Below are positions 4,408-23,052 of a DNA stretch of 23,550 nt, piece after piece. Position 1 is the stretch's first letter. The number at the start of each line of letters is the position of its first letter. Both the position numbers and the translations under genes were made by a program. Below the pieces are notes generated by a model. That model was not told the origin of the DNA. It made no database searches and saw only the letters and a program-made list of their open reading frames with translations. The stretch lies in NCBI GenBank assembly GCA_000388065.2, contig KB932202.1; one strand, 5' to 3'. The DNA is from Fonticula alba ATCC 38817. Its lineage: Eukaryota; Protista; Nucleariida.

Positions 4408-7206
4408 CTACGAGTACTCTCCTGGGATGGTCCCAGGGCGAGGGGGGCGCTGGCCGCCGGTGCTGGCCGTGTGCGAGAGGCGCCGACGTCGCCGTGGCGG
4501 TGCCACACATGCGACCGTCTCTTCAACCGGGGGAGGTGTGAGGACAGGCCATGGCCGGAGCGCCAGCGCTGCCAGCAGTTGCCCATGCCCGCTGAAGACC
4601 ACCATCGCGCGCCTGCGGCGCCGGGGAAGGAGGACAAGGGGAGGGGGGGGGGAGAAAAGCGAGTCAGTGCCGATCGGAGGCCCCGATCCACAGGAGGATG
4701 TGCATGCACAGGGGGGAGGGGGGGCGCGCGGGTGCCATGGGTCGGCCGGCTGCTCGGGCACCTGTCAAGGGAAAGAGCCGAGCAGCGATAGTCACACAGG
4801 GGCCCGGCGGCCTGGAGGGCATCGCGAAGGGCCGGATCCCTGTCCGATGGGGCCCGGGTCAGCTGGTCGCGCCAGGCGGCCACCACGGCCGCCGGCGTGT
4901 GGACATTGGCCAGCCTCGGCCGGGGGATGGCCACGGCTCGGGACCACCAGCCCGTGGGAGTCGGCACCAGGCAGTGGAAGTGCCCCGGCGTGTCGCCAGC
5001 CAGGAAGAGGACCCCGAGGCTGGGCCCCCCGGCCACCGGCATCGGGCATCGGGCCCCGGCGCTGTCCCACAAGCCAGGAGCCTCGGCGGCCTGGCCGAAC
5101 ACCACATCCGCCCCGGGTGGGTCGGCCATTTGCATGCCGGTGCACAGGGACCGGCGCTCGACCTTGCGCCGGCCAGCAATCCCCGCCGCCGCACAGACCG
5201 AGGGGAGTTAGACAGCTGTCCGAGGACCGGCCGCGAGGAGGGGAGGGCGGGGCCTTTTTTTTCCTTGGCCGAGAAGAAGCAAGAAGGAACGGCCGTGGGG
5301 GGGGGGGAAAAAGGGGGGGGGGGCGTGGGGGAAGGCACGGGTACGGTTCCGTCGCTGCGGGCCACACCGAAGGCCGCCGGGCCCAGGGCAAAGAGGGCCG
5401 CCACGCTCGTGCCGCTGATGCTGCGGTCGCTGCTGCCGGCCGCCCGCAGCCAGACGACCTGCGCATGCAGAGGGGCAGCGCCATCGCCCCAGCCGGTCAT
5501 GGCAACCAGGGTCAGATCGCCACTGCGGCTGCCCAGCAGCAAGAGCGGCCGGCGAGGGGGATCGGCGCTTGGGCCCCGGCGCCGGCGCCGGCGCTGCCAC
5601 GCCAGGCCCTCGAGCTCCGGCGGCCCGGCCGGGACACATGCACACTCGACCAACTGCATGCACAGGTATTGCTGGTGCTTGATATTCACCCGGCGATAGG
5701 GGGGCCCATGCCATGTGACGGCAGCCGAGGCACGCCCCGGGGCCGGGGGCTCCGCATGCCCCGGGGATTGTCCATGCCGCGCCGGGCCCGCGTCCAGCAC
5801 GCCACAGGGCGGGCAGATGCCCAGGCTGCCGGAACAGCTGACGGCCCGCCGGGAGGTGGCCGACTCGCTGGGCCATCGCCCCAAGCAGGTCATCGTCAGG
5901 CGAATGTCCTCCGGCCGGGCGAAGAGCCCAATGCGACCAAGCAGGACCTGGCATCGCTCCTCGGCCAGAGCCACGGTCCACCCGGCCGCCTGGGCAAGGG
6001 TTTCCAGCAGCCGGGGCGGATAGTGCAGGGGGAGGACCACCGCGCGGGTGGGCTCCACAAGGCCCGCGCCATCGGCCATGTGGAAGATCTCCAGCAGTCC
6101 GGTCCCCTGGCCGGTGGAGGTCCCCATGCAAAAGAGGCTGCCAGCATGTGGGCCGGTCAGCCGGGCAAACAGCTTGCCGGCGGTGAATTTCCCACCGGCC
6201 TCGGGGCAAAGCCGGGCCAGTTGCCGCGTCGGCACGCCGGCCTGCAAAAGGTACACCCTTGAGGGAGCGTGGGCATGGTTTGCGAGGTCAGGAGCTGGGA
6301 GAGGCGGGGGGGGGGGGGGGGGGGGGGGGGGGGNNNNNNNNNNNNNNNNNNNNNNNNNNNNNNNNNNNNNNNNNNNNNNNNNNNNNNNNNNNNNNNNNNN
6401 NNNNNNNNNNNNNNNNNNNNNNNNNNNNNNNNNNNNNNNNNNNNNNNNNNNNNNNNNNNNNNNNNNNNNNNNNNNGGGGGGGGGGGGGGGGGGGGGGGGC
6501 GGATGGACATGCGTGCGGTGGCGACCACGCACTCGGCCGAGTGGTCGCGCGTGATGAGGAGGCGCTCGTCAGCGCAATCCAGCGCCACAATCGGGCCGGC
6601 ACCAGGGGCATCAAGGTCGACGATGCTCGCGGCGGCTGGGGCCCGCGCAGCAAGCAGCCCTGCCTGCCAGGGCCCGAGGACCGCGCGGCCCGGGCCGAGG
6701 GCCGGGCTCACCAGGCCCAGTGGCAGGGATCGCACCAGCGGCGGGCCAACCACGGGCGGCCGTGCCCGCGGACCAGGCCCCGGCTTGTGCCCGGGACACC
6801 GGTCGCCCGGCGCCGAGATGGATGCCCTGTCGATGACCGTCCCCTCGGGGAAGTAACGTCGACGGACCGGGTCGTAGACAAACCCCGGCAGGGCCGGGGC
6901 ACTGGGCACCGGGTCGGCCGGAGGGGGGGCCGGAGGGGGGCCCGGCTTGGCTGCGGCCCGTTGGCCGGCCGGACTCCCCAGGGCGCCCGGGTCCACCCAG
7001 CGAGGGGGCGCGAAGAGCGACTCCGCCTGCCGGTGGTGCTCCGGCCGTGGGGGGGCGGGGACCGTCTCGCCGGTGGCCGGTGGCCGTGGCGCGGCCGAGC
7101 TCCGAGGGTCCTCTCGTCGGCCGGAACGCCGGCCACATGTTGGCCGCGCGCGGGCTGGCCGGGAGTGGCGGCCAGCGCGCCGGCCTTGGCCAAGCGGATC
7201 GGTCAT
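4408..7206 (-). CDS. Divergent WD40/beta-propeller protein, DCAF4/WDR21-like, about 730 aa; exons 7206-6533, 6257-5345, 5162-4762, 4612-4408 (intron 1 spans an assembly gap)
   Basis: LPGFVYDPVRRRYF (6891-6850) resembles the DCAF4 N-terminal LPGFYFDPEKKRYF motif. Beta-strand-like segments include LLITRDHSAEVYLL, SRSGDLTLV and ARSDGTVERRSL. Intron phases 2,0,2 close to a 2193-nt frame ending in TAG. The family call rests on one short motif plus the general fold pattern. Confidence 0.62.
6334..6475. other. Assembly gap (142 N) inside intron 1 of the DCAF4-like gene, flanked by poly-G
   Basis: N run. Confidence 0.99.
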
Positions 7207-11196: not shown

Positions 11197-13852
11197 TTAA
11201 GGGCTGCCACCGGGCGGGGGGTTGGTGATCCACGGGTGCGCGAGAGCCTCGGAGGCGGTCAGCCGCTCGGCCGGGTCCTTGACGAGTAACCGCGAAATGA
11301 GGTCCATGGACTCGGGCGAGCGCATGCGCCACGCCGGGGCCCCATAGTGGTATTGGCAGCGGATGATGCGCCGGAGCTGGCCCTGCTCCCCGGGCAGATC
11401 CTCGCCCTTGGGGCAGGGCTGGTGGTAGCAGCCCCCCGGGCCGTAGTCCTCCCCGAAGGGGGATGTCAGCGAGAGCATCATGAACAGCACCACGCCACAG
11501 GACCACACATCGAACGGGGGCCCATGGGCATGGTCGCCAATGAAAACCTCCGGCGGCATGTAATCCAACGAGCCGACTTGGGACTTGGCATAGGCCGCAC
11601 GCCGGGCCGCCCGCGCGGCCGACTGCTTGCCCCGCATGATGACCACCTGGTCGCCGAAGGGGGCCTCGGCCCCCTCGGGCCCCAGGGCACTGCCAGAGCG
11701 GCACTGGCCCTCCTGGAGGGGCTGCTCCTGCTGCAGGGCCTCCTCGGCCTGGGGACCGGACGCGGAGCGGGTGCCGTCGCTGTGGCTGCCGCTGCCGCCG
11801 CCGCCGCCGCCAAGACCCGGCCCCGCGGCCAGGGGGCTGTCTCCCAGGGGCGGACTGCTCTCCGACGACCCGGGCGGCGTAAGCGGCAGCCGGGTGGCTG
11901 GCCCACTGGCGGCCATGCCGCCGGGCCCGAGGTGGCGGGCCGCTTCGTCCTCCTCCTCCTCCTCCTCCTCCTCGGTGTCGGTTTCGGCATCGTCGCTGAT
12001 TGGCGTGGACACGCCCTCCTCGGCCGGCTCCAGCAGGGGGGACGTCTCGCCCTGGGCGTGGAAGTGGGCAAACTCCTCATCGGTCAGAGCGCGGACGACG
12101 CCGAAGTCACACAGCAGGATCGAAGAAGGGTCATTCGGGTCGGCAATCAGGATATTCTCGAGCTTGGAGGGAGGATGGGCAGATTCGGAGTCAGGATCAT
12201 GCGCATCGTGGCCGGTCACAGGGCGCCGCAGGCGCCTGACGAGCACGGGCCAGACGGAGAGGGGCGGCGGGGGGCGGAGGGAGGGGGACACGACAAAGGG
12301 CGGAGGATGCTGACTCCCGGTGCATACCTTGATATCCCGATGGATGAGCGGGATATTGTGGATGAAATCCACCGCCTCAAAGAGATTGCGCATAATGCGC
12401 GAAGTGAGCGCCTCGCCGAAGCCGCCATGGTCGATGAGCACATCGAACAGGGTCCCGCCACGGGCACTGCGAGCGGGGAGTGGCAGTGCGGCAGTGTGGG
12501 CGAGGGGGGAGGGGGGGGTCAGACGGGGGGGATCGAGTAAAATACGCTCGCCATGACAAGGGGCATGCGCCAAGCCGGGCCCGGTGTCGGTGCAGCACCG
12601 CGAAGAGGAGCAGGAGAGGAGGGGCGCAAACACGCACAGGTCCGTTCGAAGAAGCAAAAAGCGCCCATGCGAGATGGTCTCCCGCAGGCAGATCATGCCC
12701 GGGTGATAGCCGGCGGCCTTCATGGCGGCGATCTCGTTGTCCAGGCGGCGGCGGTTGCGAATGCGATCGGTGAACACCACCTTGACGGCAAAGCGCCGGC
12801 GCTCGGGCGTCCGCTCGACAGCCTCATAGACTTCGGCATAGGCGCCACTGTGACGGTGGCCGGAAGGGTCAGCACACGGGGCGAGACCGGGCCACTGGCC
12901 GGGGGGGGGGGGGGGGGGGGGGGAAGGGACAAAGGGCCGGGCGAGGGCGGGGAAGGGGCCCATGGCCGCCAGGACGAGAGGCAGAGAGACGGGGGGGGAT
13001 CGAAGACACCACGCACAAGCCCAAGACTCGAACGATCTCGTAGCGCTCCAGGAAGTCCGGCGGGAAGGCCGGCAGCGGAATGTGCTTGGTCCCGGGGAGG
13101 GACAGCCGCCGCCGGGCCTTCTCAGCCTGGGCGGCGGCCAGGGCCACGCAGGGAGATGTCGGCGGTGGCGGCGACTCGACCACCAGCAGCTGATCGAGCG
13201 CATGACCGAGGAAGAGCCCGGACACCGGGCGCGTGACGGACAGGCGCTTGGCCGCGCGGCGCTTGAGGTTCTCCAACTCGGACAGCTCGCCCACCGGCAG
13301 GCTGATGCCGGGGAGGGCGGTCAGGTCGGCGGCCGGGCCGATGAGATCGCCCTGCGAGTCGGCCCGGGTCAAACGCGAGAAGGCGTCCATGAGGGCCGGA
13401 TCGGCGAGACGCAGGCGCCCGACCGGGCCCTGGTGCAGGGCCGCCGTCCGGGGGATGGCCACATCCGCCGGCAGGGGAGCCGCCCCGCCGGCCGGGGCCT
13501 CGGCCAGCCGGGCCATGTCGTCAGCCCCCAGGGAAGGCCCGAAATCCGAGAGACCAGTCGTGTGGGACCGGGTGAGGGCCACACGCCGGGGCCCGGCCGG
13601 CAGATCATTGTCCGAGGGGGCGTGGGCCGGGGGGGCGGGCGCGAGGGGGCTCTTTGGCCTGGCCGGCCCGGGGGCCGCGCTGGCCGCATGGCGGCGCGCC
13701 TTCTCAATCAAGGAGAGGCCCGGGGGGCCGGGCGATGCCGGGGACAGGCAGCCCCCGCCGGCGAGTGGGTCCACCGGGACGACAAGGTGCAGCTGCGAAG
13801 GGCGCGCCGGGGCACCGGGGCGCTTTGTGGCGCTGACAGCATCGCCGGTCAT
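11197..13852 (-). CDS. CAMK-group Ser/Thr protein kinase, 716 aa; exons 13852-13017, 12847-12638, 12466-12328, 12162-11197
   Basis: Spliced motifs LGFGAYAEV, FAVK, NEI, DLARGGTLFD, HRDIKLENILI, DFG (12108-12100), GSLDYMPPE, DVWSCGVVLF and RLTASEALAHPW. Start context CCACCACCATG. Subfamily not assignable by eye. Confidence 0.93.
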
Positions 13853-16576: not shown

Positions 16577-16681
16577 NNNNNNNNNNNNNNNNNNNNNNNN
16601 NNNNNNNNNNNNNNNNNNNNNNNNNNNNNNNNNNNNNNNNNNNNNNNNNNNNNNNNNNNNNNNNNNNNNNNNNNNNNNNNN
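16577..16681. other. Assembly gap (105 N)
   Basis: N run with G runs on both sides. Confidence 0.99.
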
Positions 16682-17768: not shown

Positions 17769-19573
17769 TTAGTCCTTGGGGCTGTTGTCGGCCGCCGGGC
17801 GCGAGTAGCCACCAGGCGAGGGGGAGCGCCCACGGGCCGGGCCGGGAGAGGGAGAGCGCCCGCGCGAGGCAATGGGCGAGCGGCTGCGGCTACGGCTGCG
17901 GCCGCTGCGAGAGCGGCGATCATAGTCGCGATCGTAGTCGCGATCGTAGTCGCGGTCGCGGCCGTAGTCGCGGTCGCGGCGGTCGTAATCGCGGTGGCGG
18001 TCGTAATCGCGATCGCGGTGGCGGTCATAGTCACGGTCGCGGTAGCGGTCATAGTCGCGGTCGCGATCGTAGTCGCGGTCGCGATCGTAGTCGCGGTCGC
18101 GGTAGCGATCATAGTCACGGCCGTAGTCACGGTCGCGGCGATCGTAGTCACGGTCACGGTCATAGCCCCGGTCATACTCGCGGTCGTAATCACGACGCGG
18201 GCCGCCACCACGGCGGGGGCCGGACTCACGGCGGCGGACCGGCGGGCCGAAGTTGCGCGGCACGGTGTCGCGCTTGATGGTCACCACCTGGTCCTTGATC
18301 GGGGTGTTGTCGAACTCACGGATCTGTCGCCGGAAGAGAACAGTCAGTCAAGGGGGGAAGGGGGAGGGGGCGGGCCCCGCGCAAGGGAGCGCACATCTCC
18401 TGGTCCGTCCTGGCGCCGGCGGGCTGCGAGCAAGCGGGCGGAGAGGGCGGAGAGGGCGGAGAGGGCGGAGAGGGCGGAGAGGGCGGAGAGGGCGGGGGAG
18501 GGGGGCAAGCAGAGCCGGCTACAGGGAGGCAGGAAATGAAGGAGCGAGAGGGGAGGGGGGAGAGGCGGACAAAAGGGCGGCCAACAGAGAGGAACAAGGC
18601 AATCGAGGCACGTACGGCGCGATCCATGTCGTCCTCGGTCTCGAACTCGACGAAGCCCTCGCCGCCAACGACATCAGCGAAGAGGACCTCACCGATCGGG
18701 CGGAAGTGGTCCTGCGAGCACAAGAGGGGCACATGGCAAGAATGTCAGACGACCCGCGAAGGCAGGGAGGGAGGAGCGAGGAAAGGCGGAGCAGGAGGAG
18801 CAGGAGGAGGAGGAGGGGAAGAAAAAGAAGAAGGCAACATTGAGAGGGTCGTAGGACGCCACAGGAGAGAGCGCAAGGGAAGGACACGCAGGCATGCGTA
18901 CCTTCAGATCCTGCCAGCTGACAGCCGGCGAGATGTTCTCAATGATGATGCGGAAGTCGCTGTGGCGGATGCCGGGGGTGGTGCGAGCACCGCGGCTGCC
19001 CTCCTTGGAGTGCGAGACCTCCACGCGGATGAAGGAGCCGAGGAAGTTCTGGCTGTGGGCAAAGGTCAGGGCGGGGAAGAGCGCAAGAGGGAGGACCAGA
19101 CCGGGCCGAGAGCAAAAAGGGGGAGCCGATAGGGCCGAGAGCAGACGGCGGGGGCCGAGTGGAGGAGGACGAGGAGGGAGGAGTCACGAACCGGTTCATC
19201 TGGCGGACGGCCTCCTCGGACTCGGACGGGCTGTTGTAGTCGATGAAGCAGAAGGTGGAGCGGTTGTTGGACACCAGGCGAATGTCGTTGATGGCGCCGA
19301 ACTGCGCGTGTGTCATCGATGAAGTGGGCATCAGGCGTGAGTTGGCAAAGGGAGACAGAGGCCAGGGCACGGTAAGCATGAAGCGAGCGAGCGGCCAAGC
19401 GAACGGGGCGGTAAGAAGAGGGCAAAGAAAAGAGAGAGAGAGAGAGAGAGAGAGAGGAGGGGGGGCGGGGGCACCTTGTCGAACTGGCTGCGGAGATCGT
19501 TCTCCTGGGTGTCGGAGGACAGCCCGCCAACGTAGATGCGGCTCTGTGAAGACCGCGAGGAGGGGGGAGGCAT
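17769..19573 (-). CDS. SR-family splicing factor (RRM + pseudo-RRM + RD/RS tail), SRSF1/4/5/6-like, 336 aa; exons 19573-19475, 19301-19192, 19052-18902, 18711-18616, 18323-17769
   Basis: RRM1 has RIYVGGL (RNP2) and FCFIDY (RNP1). RRM2 has the SR-diagnostic SWQDLKDHF across exons 3/4 and GEGFVEFETEDDMDRAIREFD. The tail has RDY repeats then RSRSRSRSP. Intron phases 0,2,0,0 are consistent. Confidence 0.92.
17913..18194 (-). repeat. Coding low-complexity repeat (R-D-Y/R-D units, 94 codons) in the last exon of the SR protein
   Basis: Degenerate CGC/GAC/TAC tandem units translating to RDYDRDRDYDR... Confidence 0.92.
18441..18494. repeat. Minisatellite, 6 x GAGAGGGCG (CGCCCTCTC on the SR sense strand), in SR intron 4
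   Basis: Six exact 9-nt copies read directly. Confidence 0.92.
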
Positions 19574-20318
19574 GGTTAGGAAGGGAGGGAGAATCCGAGA
19601 GACACAAACCGAGGGGGGCAGAGGAGGACGCGGCAAGAGAGAGAGAGAGAGAGCCCACACGCGGACGACCGTACCATGGCGAAGAAGTGAAGCCCGGGAA
19701 GAGGGGCGCGGGGCGGGTCTAACAGGAAACGGCCCAAATGAAGAGCGAGGGGCGACGAGGGCGGAAGGCAAGGGGAGTGCTGTGCAGAAGAAGGGCGAGA
19801 GGGGAGGGGGGGGGGGGGGGGAGGGAGGAGGGGGCTGCCGTCTGTGCGCACCCAGAGGCGGGATGCGGCCGGCGGGGGGCCGGCCCAAGAGGACACCTCC
19901 CCCCACCCGGAGGCCCGAATCTGAAACCGCCACCATGCTCTCCCGCTCATGGGACGCCAGAATTCGGCCGCGACACCTGCGCCGGTCCCTGTGTGCCCTC
20001 CGGGGAGGGGGACACCGGCCGCCCGAGGGTGAACATGGACGCCGCCGCGCGCATCCCCCGCACCTCCCACCCCGTACCCGGCACCCCCCGACTCGCGCCT
20101 CGTCTCCCTGCGCCTTTGGCTCCCCCCCCCCCCCCCGAGCGCGGGATGAGGCTCAAACAAAGCCACGAAATGACGGTTATACAGCGTGCAAGTTGGGCAT
20201 TCTAGAAGACTAGGAAAAGGGTGGCGAGCAGACTGCGGACGATCCCGCCCTCTGGCCACATCATGCTCGGGAGGCAGGCTGGTTGGCGGCCGCCCGCGTG
20301 TCTTTCTCTCTGCCCTCC

Positions 20319-20319
<1 letters not shown>

Positions 20320-20383
<64 letters not shown>

Positions 20384-20469
20384 NNNNNNNNNNNNNNNNN
20401 NNNNNNNNNNNNNNNNNNNNNNNNNNNNNNNNNNNNNNNNNNNCCCCCCCCCCCCCCCCCCCCCCCCCC
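20320..20469. repeat. Poly-C tract (64 C, 60-N gap, 26 C)
   Basis: Read directly. True length is unknown because of the gap. Confidence 0.9.
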
Positions 20470-20964: not shown

Positions 20965-21359
20965 NNNNNNNNNNNNNNNNNNNNNNNNNNNNNNNNNNNN
21001 NNNNNNNNNNNNNNNNNNNNNNNNNNNNNNNNNNNNNNNNNNNNNNNNNNNNNNNNNNNNNNNNNNNNNNNNNNNNNNNNNNNNNNNNNNNNNNNNNNNN
21101 NNNNNNNNNNNNNNNNNNNNNNNNNNNNNNNNNNNNNNNNNNNNNNNNNNNNNNNNNNNNNNNNNNNNNNNNNNNNNNNNNNNNNNNNNNNNNNNNNNNN
21201 NNNNNNNNNNNNNNNNNNNNNNNNNNNNNNNNNNNNNNNNNNNNNNNNNNNNNNNNNNNNNNNNNNNNNNNNNNNNNNNNNNNNNNNNNNNNNNNNNNNN
21301 NNNNNNNNNNNNNNNNNNNNNNNNNNNNNNNNNNNNNNNNNNNNNNNNNNNNNNNNNNN
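20965..21359. other. Assembly gap (395 N) just downstream of the desaturase stop
   Basis: N run flanked by poly-C on the left and poly-G on the right. Confidence 0.99.
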
Positions 21360-21387: not shown

Positions 21388-22966
21388 TTAGTCCTCGACG
21401 ACCTGCTCAAGGCCCTCGGCGTCGGAGGCGGCCAGGCGGGCGATGCGCATCTGGGTGAGCAGGTTGCGCGCGGCCTTGGAGTGGCGCTGCACACCGCCAT
21501 TGAAGGCGATGGTGGTGTCCTTGCCGACCTTATCGACCAGGACCTCCGCACCGCCGGGGTGCTTGTCGAAGAAGTCCGCCACGTCATGGACCATGGCGTC
21601 GATGACCATCAGCTGGCGGCCCTTGCGCACCTCGGCGTCGAAGGTGGCCTTGGTCCAGAGGGGGAGAGTCTGAGGGCGATAGGGGGGGGGTGAGAAAAGA
21701 CCTGGCCAGGGGGGGGGGGACATATGAAAAGGGAGGGGGGTGGGGCATGGATGAAGACATACCTCCGGGTCGACACCCCAGCTGATCTCGGAGCGGGTCT
21801 GGTCGTAGATGGCCTGCAGGGCATCCAGCTTCTGGGTGAGGATCTCGGCATCGGGCTTCTGCTTGATGTCCACGGCCAGGCCCAGAGCGGCCAGGACCCA
21901 GACAATGATGGAGACCAGGTCCAGCTGGCCGGGCAGAGCCCCAGCGCGATGGTCATCCGGGTGGGCATGGTGGAAGTTGAGGAAGTTCTCGCCGAAGGTC
22001 AGGACGTTGGCCACCAGGTTGTCGAACCCGGCGTTCGGGCCGAAGAGCTGGGCCTCGCCGAAGGTCCGAGCCAGGGCGCTGGCGAACCAGTTCACCAGGC
22101 TGAAGAGGACCATGCGGACGATGCCGGCATAGAAGATGCCGCCCTGGGTACGAGAGGAGGGACGGGGACGGGGACGGGGGGGGGGCGGGGGGGGCACCAT
22201 CGAATGTCAGTCACCGGAGCCCCATCCGAGCCCCAGCGGAGGGAGACCCTATAACCATGACCAATGATGAATCCGGCAAAATGGCAGGGCCACGCGCGAT
22301 GGGCGCGAGCAGCCGGGCGATCGGACGCACGATGAGATCGCCCCAAGTGGCGGCGACGAGGCCCGGCAGGAGAACACCGAAGGCCAGCGACAGGATGGGG
22401 AACATGGCAAGCTGCAGGGCCACCATGCCGTCGACCTCCAGGTCGGACACCGAGACATTGGCCGGAGCCGGGGTCGTCCGGCCCAGGGGGCCCAGCAGGG
22501 CCGAGCGCACAAAGCCAGCCTTGGCATTCAGCGGGTCGGCCTCGGTGTTGGCATGAGCGTGGTGCACCCGATGGCGGAGAGCCCAGTCGATGGCCGGGCC
22601 CTCGAAGGCATTGGCCGCGCCGAAGCCCAGCAACAGGAGCTTCACCAGCGGAGTGGACACGCGCACATTCCGGTGCGCGGCCATCCGATGGTACCCGAGG
22701 TAGTGGCCAATGTGCCCGAGGAGGTACATCCCCCCGGCCAGGGCCAGGGTCTTGCAGTGGGCGTCAGGGGCCAGGCCGAGGTACGGGGCGGCCAGCGTGC
22801 CGGCCGCCGTCGCGGCAAACAGGCCCGCCCGCAGCGGGTCGATCACGAAGGTGGCCGGCTTGGCGCTGGCGGCGGCCTTGCTGCCACCGGCGGGGGTGGC
22901 CTTAGAAGGGGGCGGGGCTACGGAGGAAGCGCCCTGCTCCGCGGCGAAGGACTTCGAGGCGGCCAT
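21388..22966 (-). CDS. OLE1/SCD-type Delta9 acyl-CoA desaturase homologue with C-terminal cytochrome b5 domain and an altered metal site, 432 aa; exons 22966-22331, 22143-21763, 21669-21388
   Basis: His box 1 HRMAAH (22690-22673), box 2 HRVHH (22573-22559), WGDLI|GGIFYAGIVR junction, TFGENFLNFHH, AALGLA. The b5 domain has HPGG and FNGGVQRHSKAARNLL, as in fungal Ole1. Two phase-0 GT-AG introns. Confidence 0.9.
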
Positions 22967-23052
22967 GATGGGGGGGGGGGGGGGGGGGAGCTGTGGGATG
23001 CGCCGACATCGCGTGTGCGCAAGGGGGAGGGGAGATTAGCGCCGGATGGGCG

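What the first reader, a model, noticed from the sequence alone, without database searches (positions are those of the whole stretch)
21388..22966. OLE1/SCD-like desaturase-b5 fusion that appears to have lost one of its two metal sites
Seen: His box 1 (HRMAAH), box 2 (HRVHH), the last two His of box 3 and both b5 haem His (HPGG, RHS) are intact. The conserved W-x-x-N-S-x-A-H motif reads WFASALAR (N to S at 22080-22078; H to R at 22068-22066). Box 3 reads GENFLNFHH instead of GEGxHNxHH (H to L, codon CTC, 21981-21979). DPH and SHxGW are also changed (DPL, SALLG). Established, recalled from SCD1 structures and not looked up: nine His bind two metals; H269, H298 and the water-bridging N265 serve the same ion together with H160 and H302, while H120, H125, H157, H161 and H301 bind the other. 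Inference: all three ligand changes fall on one metal while the five-His site and electron-transfer module are kept in an intact ORF. That looks like remodelling rather than random decay: a mononuclear enzyme with new chemistry, or a lipid-binding/sensing pseudo-desaturase. The L differs from the Q found at this position in front-end desaturases.
Basis: partly seen in the sequence, partly recalled or inferred. Interest (0 to 1): 0.85.

Follow-up and report, generated by a model that had tools for sequence, protein, structure and literature searches.

The report
Desaturase look-alike missing one metal site
The amoeba Fonticula alba expresses a fatty-acid-desaturase look-alike fused to cytochrome b5 that has lost one of its two iron sites, and relatives in other single-celled kin of animals and fungi share that loss, so it is an old, maintained variant and not a dying gene.

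Summary
The stretch is Fonticula alba gene H696_01631. It has three exons, not one ORF. Its 432-aa product matches the database protein exactly, and two RNA libraries show both introns removed with no base differences.

Alignment to human and mouse SCD1 places S234, R238 and L267 at N265, H269 and H298. All five ligands of metal 1, H160, H302 and both haem histidines are kept. An AlphaFold model (pLDDT 87.6) has the SCD1 fold plus a b5 domain.

The protein belongs to a supported clade of ten, with Capsaspora, Chromosphaera and seven unnamed protist sequences.
- Metal-1 histidines are kept in 48 of 48 cells and metal-2 residues in 20 of 50.
- Chromosphaera has lost all five metal-2 residues.
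- The replacements differ between lineages.
- The only clade-specific conserved polar residues lie in b5.
- b5 is more conserved than the desaturase domain, the reverse of canonical OLE1.

Mouse SCD1 H265L, the same position as R238, is stable, holds about one iron and is inactive.

Best reading: a maintained pseudo-desaturase that is no Delta9 desaturase, keeps metal 1 and works mainly through its b5 haem. A single-iron enzyme is the main rival. Whether Fonticula has a canonical OLE1 could not be determined.

The parts
22331..22966 (-). Exon 1 (residues 1-212): low-complexity N-terminus, TM1-TM3 and the start of TM4, His boxes 1 and 2
   Evidence: Translation. RNA contigs join 22331 to 22143. 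The spliced CDS equals P0001.
22144..22330 (-). Intron 1, 187 nt, GTGCGT..ACCCAG, contains a C-rich run; closes the reading frame if retained
   Evidence: RNA joint 'skips 187' in X4 and X5, with zero RNA depth inside. Splice ends read.
21763..22143 (-). Exon 2 (residues 213-339): rest of TM4, the degenerate NSxAH motif, the degenerate His box 3, and the linker helix
   Evidence: phmmer to 4ZYO and 4YMK, E 7e-8 and 2e-7. RNA contigs.
21670..21762 (-). Intron 2, 93 nt, GTATGT..CCTCAG, in frame and so invisible to an ORF scan
   Evidence: RNA joint 'skips 93' in X4 and X5. Splice ends read.
21388..21669 (-). Exon 3 (residues 340-432 plus the stop at 21390-21388): cytochrome b5 domain
   Evidence: Pfam PF00173 Cyt-b5, E 3e-15, 56.4 bits, above the curated cut-off.
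22673..22690 (-). His box 1, HRMAAH (H93, H98; human SCD1 H120, H125; metal 1)
   Evidence: Alignments. Invariant in the clade.
22559..22573 (-). His box 2, HRVHH (H132, H135, H136; human H157, H160, H161)
   Evidence: Alignments.
22529..22537 (-). DPL in place of DPH or DPY
   Evidence: Canonical Y 0.85, changed in the clade.
22490..22504 (-). SALLG in place of SHxGW (this His is 100% conserved in 54 canonical sequences)
22066..22080 (-). SALAR in place of NSxAH: S234 at human N265 and R238 at human H269 (mouse H265)
   Evidence: The mouse numbering offset comes from the delta2-23 construct (PMC10359943).
21967..21981 (-). His box 3 reads LNFHH: L267 at human H298; H270 (H301, metal 1) and H271 (H302) are kept
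21433..21645 (-). Cytochrome b5 fold with haem ligands H376 (HPGG, 21561-21559) and H402 (RHSK, 21483-21481)
   Evidence: Pfam. Foldseek matches to b5 structures, TM by target 0.8-0.87. R401 and K404 are clade-specific.

Best explanation
Shown: H696_01631 is an expressed, correctly spliced three-exon gene of Fonticula alba. It encodes a 432-aa membrane protein with the SCD1/OLE1 desaturase fold fused to a C-terminal cytochrome b5. It belongs to an old clade, found in Fonticula, the filasterean Capsaspora, the ichthyosporean Chromosphaera and unnamed protists. In this clade the five-histidine metal site 1 and the haem site are strictly kept, while metal site 2 (H160, N265, H269, H298, H302) has been given up in lineage-specific ways. 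Inferred: the protein binds haem and at most one non-haem metal, so it cannot run the two-iron, oxygen-activating Delta9 desaturation of OLE1 or SCD1. Its selected function lies mainly in the b5 domain. The likeliest role is a membrane-anchored haem electron carrier or partner for another ER enzyme, possibly a canonical desaturase in a hetero-oligomer. The desaturase-like domain would be kept as a folded, metal-1-stabilised anchor or scaffold, that is, a pseudo-desaturase.
For: Gene model and expression: RNA contigs of 1356 and 1311 nt from two libraries span the whole CDS, lack both introns and show no mismatch; word depth is about 40, and the CDS equals P0001. Ligand mapping: phmmer to 4ZYO and 4YMK. 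Fold: AlphaFold2 pLDDT 87.6 and pTM 0.80; Foldseek to SCD1 gives E 5e-16, TM by target 0.78-0.83 and rmsd 2.6-2.9 A; b5 structures match the C-terminus; the best whole-length matches are fungal Ole1 proteins. Clade: exhaustive phmmer over 1.84 billion representatives, then a careful IQ-TREE rooted on b5-less SCDs, gives a 10-member clade with support 98/88. Site pattern: metal 1 is kept in 48/48 cells and metal 2 in 20/50 (Fisher 4e-12); Chromosphaera reads W,T,F,L,Y at all five metal-2 positions. Shift of constraint: b5 identity exceeds desaturase-domain identity in 96% of clade pairs (0.53 vs 0.39) against 8% of canonical pairs (0.35 vs 0.48). The only clade-specific conserved polar residues are R401 and K404 beside the haem His; no new polar residue is fixed in the desaturase domain. 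Canonical invariants near the site (SHxGW His, the T before W262, P288) are relaxed. Experiment in the literature: mouse SCD1 H265L, the position of Fonticula R238, is stable, holds slightly under one Fe at Fe1 and has no activity; the other eight His-to-Leu mutants were too unstable to purify, which gives a structural reason to keep metal 1 (PMC10359943). The same paper cites Shanklin 1994, whose title states that eight histidines are catalytically essential. Precedent: the Candida OLE1 paralogue OLE2 does not behave as a Delta9 desaturase in deletion strains (PMC12955410).
Against: No biochemical data exist for any clade member. Strict retention of six histidines for about a billion years could equally mean that metal 1 is catalytic. 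The desaturase domain still keeps many canonical residues, which is more than a mere anchor would seem to need. The partner enzyme is unknown, and I could not establish whether Fonticula has a canonical OLE1. The assignment of H160, H298 and H302 to metal 2 rests on recall plus the clade pattern; only H269 and the five-plus-four count were verified in a paper I could read.
Confidence: 0.45

Rival explanations
1. It is a single-iron enzyme with new chemistry. The fused b5 passes electrons to one five-histidine iron at site 1. That iron has one open coordination position and oxidises a lipid or other substrate in a reaction different from Delta9 desaturation.
For: All five metal-1 histidines are invariant in 48/48 cells across very deep divergences. 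The SCD fold and many canonical residues are kept. The electron-donor domain is intact and under strong constraint. Leu at the H298 position is fixed in the six core members, which suggests a settled architecture.
Against: No clade-specific conserved residue appears in the desaturase domain, and residues shaping the substrate kink vary (T261 position: N,H,Q,T,N,Y,H,N,S,A). The one-iron state of SCD1 (H265L or turnover-inactivated) is inactive (PMC10359943). Conservation has moved from the desaturase domain to b5.
Confidence: 0.25
2. It is still a two-iron desaturase. The second iron is held loosely by the remaining ligands (H135 and H271 in Fonticula) plus water or lipid, and is reloaded from the labile iron pool.
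For: Fe2 of SCD1 is labile and is exchanged with free ferrous iron during turnover (PMC10359943). By recalled knowledge, front-end desaturases work with Gln in place of the first box-3 His. A few clade or yeast-group members have Q there.
Against: Three of the five metal-2 positions are replaced in Fonticula by Ser, Arg and Leu. A single H265L change already abolishes Fe2 binding and activity (PMC10359943). Chromosphaera has none of the five residues left. The replacements are hydrophobic, aromatic or cationic, not ligand-like.
Confidence: 0.1
3. In Fonticula specifically the gene is on its way to becoming a pseudogene: transcribed but no longer functional. The clade function, whatever it is, has been lost in this lineage.
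For: The terminal branch is long (1.42 against 0.42-0.74 for its nearest relatives). The desaturase domain has unique changes at positions conserved both in canonical proteins and in the rest of the clade (D140N, H238R, F273H, Y277H, K290S). Desaturase-domain identity to relatives is only 28-38%.
Against: The 432-codon frame is intact, both introns are precisely removed and RNA contigs are well covered. The b5 domain is 49-67% identical to orthologues, with every conserved b5 position kept. The only listed difference in independent environmental DNA is synonymous. The model is confident throughout.
Confidence: 0.1
4. The substitutions are sequencing, assembly or gene-model artefacts.
For: The draft assembly has N gaps and long homopolymers right next to the gene.
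Against: RNA contigs from two libraries and DNA contigs from two unrelated samples agree base for base over the three codons. Orthologues show the same class of changes.
Confidence: 0.01

Closest known systems
Fungal Ole1 / acyl-CoA Delta9 desaturase with C-terminal cytochrome b5 (S. cerevisiae P21147, H. capsulatum Q12618, S. pombe O94523)
   Same: Same two-domain architecture and fold. These are the best whole-length structural matches (E 1e-26 to 9e-29, about 30% identity). They share His boxes 1 and 2, the HH of box 3, HPGG and the second haem His.
   Different: Canonical proteins have N, H, H, H at the SCD1 positions 265, 269, 298 and 302 in 54 of 54 sequences. Fonticula has S, R, L, H. 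The SHxGW His and other invariants are lost, and domain conservation is reversed. The clade branches outside the bulk of the canonical b5 fusions.
Mammalian SCD1 (PDB 4ZYO, 4YMK, 6WF2)
   Same: Four-helix membrane fold with a histidine-only metal centre; TM by target 0.78-0.83 and rmsd 2.6-2.9 A. Gapless alignment across the ligand motifs.
   Different: SCD1 has nine His and two irons, and takes electrons from a separate b5. Here three of the five residues that serve the second iron are replaced, and b5 is fused.
Mouse SCD1 H265L mutant (Shen et al. 2023, PMC10359943)
   Same: The change is at the same position as Fonticula R238. It shows experimentally that the fold tolerates loss of this ligand, giving a stable protein with iron only at Fe1.
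   Different: It is a laboratory single mutant with no activity. The natural protein carries two further metal-2 changes and belongs to a conserved family, so it presumably has a selected function.
Yeast OLE2-type OLE1 paralogues (group with Komagataella C4R7B6, Eremothecium AAL078W, Zygosaccharomyces ZYRO0G16742g, Hanseniaspora; Candida OLE2 in the literature)
   Same: A second OLE1-like b5 fusion with partial decay of the metal-2 positions (N265 to G/E/P, H298 to Q/N/A in some) and b5 more conserved than the desaturase domain (0.63 vs 0.37). Candida OLE2 deletions show it is no Delta9 desaturase (PMC12955410).
   Different: Most members keep all nine His. The careful tree nests them inside fungal OLE1s, apart from the protist clade. 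A tree holding the two groups together is not rejected and scores slightly better (AU p 0.63), so whether this is common origin or parallel evolution is unresolved. I could not place a Candida OLE2 sequence in the tree.
Front-end desaturases with QxxHH in box 3
   Same: They also lack the first His of box 3.
   Different: This is recalled knowledge, not tested here. They have Gln, which can still interact with the metal, they keep the other ligands, and their b5 is N-terminal. Here the residue is Leu and two more metal-2 residues are gone.

Membership tests
Catalytically competent SCD/OLE1 acyl-CoA Delta9 desaturase | SCD-type fold with four transmembrane helices | tested here: met
   AlphaFold2 pLDDT 87.6. 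Foldseek to 4YMK, 6WF2 and 4ZYO gives E about 5e-16 and TM by target 0.78-0.83.
Catalytically competent SCD/OLE1 acyl-CoA Delta9 desaturase | His box 1 (HxxxxH) and His box 2 (HxxHH) | tested here: met
   HRMAAH and HRVHH align to the SCD1 boxes.
Catalytically competent SCD/OLE1 acyl-CoA Delta9 desaturase | His box 3 (HxxHH) complete | tested here: not met
   It reads LNFHH. The first His is H in 54/54 canonical sequences.
Catalytically competent SCD/OLE1 acyl-CoA Delta9 desaturase | Ninth ligand His and water-holding Asn (NSxAH) | tested here: not met
   It reads SALAR. N and H are each 1.00 in canonical sequences. The H-to-L mutant of mouse SCD1 is inactive (PMC10359943).
Catalytically competent SCD/OLE1 acyl-CoA Delta9 desaturase | Two non-haem irons bound; Delta9 desaturation of acyl-CoA | not testable with these tools
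   Needs metal analysis and an activity or complementation assay.
Fungal-type desaturase-b5 fusion (architecture only) | C-terminal Cyt-b5 domain with both haem histidines | tested here: met
   PF00173 at 56.4 bits against a cut-off of 23.7. H376 (HPGG) and H402 are present.
Metal-2-degenerate OLE1-like clade (defined in this report) | Falls in one supported clade with Capsaspora CAOG_02503 and the Chromosphaera perkinsii homologue | tested here: met
   Careful IQ-TREE with an outgroup gives 98/88 for 10 rows and 98/87 for the core 6.
Metal-2-degenerate OLE1-like clade (defined in this report) | All five metal-1 His kept; the H298 position is never His; the N265 position is non-Asn (9 of 10) | tested here: met
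   Fonticula reads HHHHH at metal 1 and H,S,R,L,H at metal 2.
Metal-2-degenerate OLE1-like clade (defined in this report) | RHSK around the second haem His; b5 more conserved than the desaturase domain | tested here: met
   R401 and K404 are present in 9/9 members with a b5 domain. Fonticula pairs: b5 0.49-0.67 against desaturase domain 0.28-0.38.
Yeast OLE2-type paralogues | Common ancestry with the Saccharomycotina second OLE1-like gene | tested here: inconclusive
   Together in the quick tree (96), apart in the careful rooted tree, and the union is not rejected (AU p 0.63, held tree +6.9 lnL).

The most novel reading that the evidence does not exclude
A family conserved since early opisthokonts, and perhaps homologous to yeast OLE2, of natural one-iron, five-histidine membrane proteins fed by their own cytochrome b5. 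They would carry out a lipid oxidation or sensing reaction unlike any known membrane desaturase. They would also offer a stable natural Fe1-only scaffold for dissecting the histidine-only di-iron centre.
Probability: 0.25. Interest if true: 0.85.

Novelty: new variant of a known kind. Interest (0 to 1): 0.65.

Why it matters
The mechanism of membrane desaturases with a histidine-only two-iron centre is still open. One reason is that eight of the nine single histidine mutants of SCD1 are too unstable to purify (PMC10359943). This clade has kept one site and discarded the other over very long times, which gives two things:
- an evolutionary read-out of which residues belong to which metal; the pattern matches the recalled structural assignment;
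- stable candidate proteins for studying the five-histidine site alone.

It also shows that annotation as 'acyl-CoA desaturase' or 'b5 domain protein' hides non-desaturase members. That matters when lipid metabolism of protists close to animals and fungi is reconstructed from genomes. Together with Candida OLE2 it points to a recurring non-desaturase role for OLE1-derived b5 fusions.

Tried and rejected
Canonical OLE1 or SCD in Fonticula. I tried four routes.
- The word-index searches returned only clade members and two Agaricomycete proteins.
- I looked up the ten hits richest in Ala/Gly/Pro/Arg in case one was the Fonticula paralogue; none was.
- The scan's own notes on this genome mention no other desaturase.
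- The supplements of a lipid-genomics paper that uses Fonticula hold no Fonticula entries.
This leaves the question undecided. It is not evidence of absence.

Naming the unnamed clade members. Cluster look-ups and contig look-ups gave only run accessions, and no paper mentions them.

Primary SCD1 structure papers (PMC4689147, PMC7483794) are not held. The full metal-1/metal-2 assignment therefore stays partly recalled.

Rejected:
- A single continuous ORF.
- An artefact.
- Mycena and Suillus hits P0172 and P0173 as clade members; they keep NSLAH and the first box-3 His.
- The quick-tree union with the yeast group as an established result.

dN/dS was not computed. The nearest relatives are only 28-41% identical, so synonymous sites are saturated, and the near-identical environmental copies differ at one site only.

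No paper mentions H696_01631 or CAOG_02503.

Full report
**What is there.** The window is high-GC eukaryotic DNA. The stretch 21388-22966 on the minus strand does not translate as one frame. It holds two ORFs, 22966-22211 and 22200-21388. Reading the sequence shows a GT..AG intron of 187 nt (22330-22144) and a second, in-frame one of 93 nt (21762-21670). The three exons (22966-22331, 22143-21763, 21669-21388) give a 1299-nt CDS. Its 432-aa product is identical to database protein P0001, 'hypothetical protein H696_01631 [Fonticula alba]'.

**Is it real and expressed.** Contigs from two RNA libraries of the same organism (1356 and 1311 nt, word depth about 40) cover the whole CDS. They show exactly these two joints and no mismatch, and depth inside intron 1 is zero. 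DNA contigs from a soil metagenome and from a 2025 run labelled with another organism also cover the ligand codons. The only listed difference is 21532 A>G, which is a synonymous GAT>GAC at D385. An artefact is therefore excluded.

**The observation.**
- Pfam finds a weak FA_desaturase match in exon 1 and a clear Cyt-b5 domain in exon 3.
- phmmer aligns exons 1 and 2 without gaps across the motifs to human SCD1 (4ZYO) and mouse SCD1 (4YMK).
- HRMAAH and HRVHH are boxes 1 and 2. SALAR lies on NSAAH, LNFHH on HNYHH, DPL on DPH and SALLG on SHVGW.
- The 4YMK chain lacks residues 2-23, so chain index plus 22 gives mouse numbering. The NSAAH residues are then mouse N261 and H265 (human N265 and H269), and box 3 is mouse H294, H297, H298 (human H298, H301, H302).

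**Fold.** An AlphaFold2 model built on a 51-sequence alignment has pLDDT 87.6 and pTM 0.80. Foldseek gives SCD1 structures as the top hits (E about 5e-16, TM by target 0.78-0.83, rmsd 2.6-2.9 A). Cytochrome b5 structures match the C-terminus. The best whole-length matches in Swiss-Prot models are the fungal Ole1-type b5 fusions.

**Relatives.** An exhaustive phmmer search of 1.84 billion representatives found 94 proteins at E<=1e-30. I tabulated the ligand columns over all listed hits. The closest hits are non-canonical at the metal-2 positions, whereas nearly all others read N, H, H, H. These closest hits are Capsaspora owczarzaki CAOG_02503, a Chromosphaera perkinsii protein, and unnamed Logan and JGI sequences.

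A careful IQ-TREE (LG+C20+F+G4), rooted on b5-less SCDs, recovers a 10-member clade with support 98/88 and a core of six with 98/87. The named members span Holomycota, Filasterea and Ichthyosporea, so the clade predates the split of the animal and fungal lineages, or is at least that widely spread.

**Pattern inside the clade.**
- The five positions recalled as metal-1 ligands (human H120, H125, H157, H161, H301) are His in 48 of 48 cells.
- The five metal-2 positions (H160, N265, H269, H298, H302) are kept in 20 of 50 cells (Fisher 4e-12; the cells are not phylogenetically independent, but the replacing residues differ, so many separate changes are involved).
- H298 is never His (L in the six core members, otherwise M, R, T or Q).
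- N265 is Asn once.
- H302 is H, R, Y, L, A or F.
- Chromosphaera has lost all five.
- Both haem histidines are kept in every member that has the domain.
- Other canonical invariants are relaxed as well: the SHxGW His (1.00 in 54 canonical sequences), the Thr before W262 that helps shape the substrate kink (a role I recall, not tested), and P288.
- No clade-specific conserved polar residue exists in the desaturase domain. The clade-specific positions are R401 and K404 beside the second haem His, M413 in b5, and a conservative I-to-L change at 296.

**Shift of constraint.** Among canonical b5-fused desaturases the desaturase domain is more conserved than b5 (0.48 vs 0.35; b5 is higher in 8% of 1431 pairs). 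In the clade it is the reverse (0.39 vs 0.53; b5 is higher in 96% of 28 pairs). Fonticula is one of the most derived members:
- its terminal branch is 1.42;
- it has unique changes at positions conserved in both groups (D140N, H238R, F273H, Y277H, K290S);
- its b5 domain has none and is 67% identical to its nearest relative.

**What the literature adds.** Shen et al. 2023 (PMC10359943) state that nine histidines bind two irons, five for Fe1 and four for Fe2. Mouse H265L, a Fe2 ligand at the position of Fonticula R238, is the only one of the nine His-to-Leu mutants that is stable. It carries slightly under one iron, assigned to Fe1, and is inactive. Fe2 is also the iron apparently lost during turnover.

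I could not read the primary structure papers. The assignment of H160, H298 and H302 to the second metal is therefore recalled. The clade's variation pattern reproduces that split exactly, which is independent support.

Candida OLE2, an OLE1 paralogue, does not behave as a Delta9 desaturase in deletion strains and affects prostaglandin E2 formation (PMC12955410). No paper mentions H696_01631 or CAOG_02503.

**The yeast parallel.** One group of hits contains second OLE1-like genes of Saccharomycotina: Komagataella, Saccharomycopsis, Eremothecium AAL078W, Zygosaccharomyces, Saccharomycodes and Hanseniaspora. It shows partial decay at N265 and H298 and the same reversed domain conservation (0.37 vs 0.63). 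A quick tree joins it to the protist clade. The careful rooted tree nests it within fungal OLE1s. An AU test does not reject the union, and the constrained tree is even 6.9 log-likelihood units better (p 0.63). One origin or parallel evolution therefore stays open, and long-branch attraction is possible. I could not add a Candida OLE2 sequence, so its membership in this group is an inference.

**Interpretation.**
- Shown: the gene is real, expressed, spliced, and part of a maintained clade that has specifically given up metal site 2.
- Inferred from SCD1 biochemistry: it does not perform canonical Delta9 desaturation and binds at most one non-haem metal.
- Most likely (0.45): a pseudo-desaturase whose selected function runs through the b5 haem domain, with metal 1 kept because the fold needs it.
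- Main rival (0.25): a true single-iron enzyme fed by its own b5.
- Less likely: residual two-iron activity with a loosely held second iron (0.1), and lineage-specific decay in Fonticula (0.1).

**Limits.**
- I could not determine whether Fonticula also has a canonical OLE1. This matters for choosing between a partner role and a stand-alone role.
- The organisms behind seven clade members are unknown.
- No coordinates were available from the model, so distances in the site were not measured.
- dN/dS was not computed.

Noticed in passing
window 20965-21359, 20384-20443, 16577-16681, 6334-6475; homopolymers at 20320-20383 and 22970-22988: Assembly gaps (N runs of 60-395 nt) are flanked by very long C or G homopolymers. 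One gap starts 29 nt after the stop codon of this gene, so its 3' UTR is cut off in the assembly. A 19-nt G run sits 4 nt upstream of the ATG and stops RNA and DNA contigs.
   Followed up: partly
runs X9-X16 against window 21388-22966: Near-identical copies of this Fonticula gene occur in soil, sediment and sludge metagenomes, and in four 2025 DNA runs filed under a different organism label. This or a very close strain is therefore widespread, or a contaminant or associate of that organism.
   Followed up: no
proteins P0009, P0010, P0015, P0017, P0021, P0023, P0027, P0028 and others: Many of the best canonical hits are 650-830 aa long, with the desaturase-b5 unit in the C-terminal half. They carry an uncharacterised N-terminal extension of about 300-400 aa.
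   Followed up: no
P0172 (Mycena albidolilacea), P0173 (Suillus paluster): Agaricomycete b5-fused desaturase homologues keep NSLAH and the first box-3 His. However, Mycena reads HNFH-SFP, one His short of HNFHH, and the Suillus model is interrupted by an insert at that point. They also have an insert in the b5 domain. This is another, separate case of a disturbed metal-2 ligand.
   Followed up: no
L003 (Logan SRR23274238 contig, 7.4 kb): Clade member P0043 is an intronless gene on a compact contig next to a LIN52 homologue. The source organism is unknown.
   Followed up: no
window 11200-13203 (-) and 18942-19658 (-): Neighbouring ORFs carry a protein kinase domain and an RRM domain. Nothing nearby relates to lipid metabolism.
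   Followed up: no
Candida OLE2 is implicated in prostaglandin E2 formation (PMC12955410), so a link between OLE2-like proteins and oxylipin pathways might be worth testing. This is speculation only.
   Followed up: no
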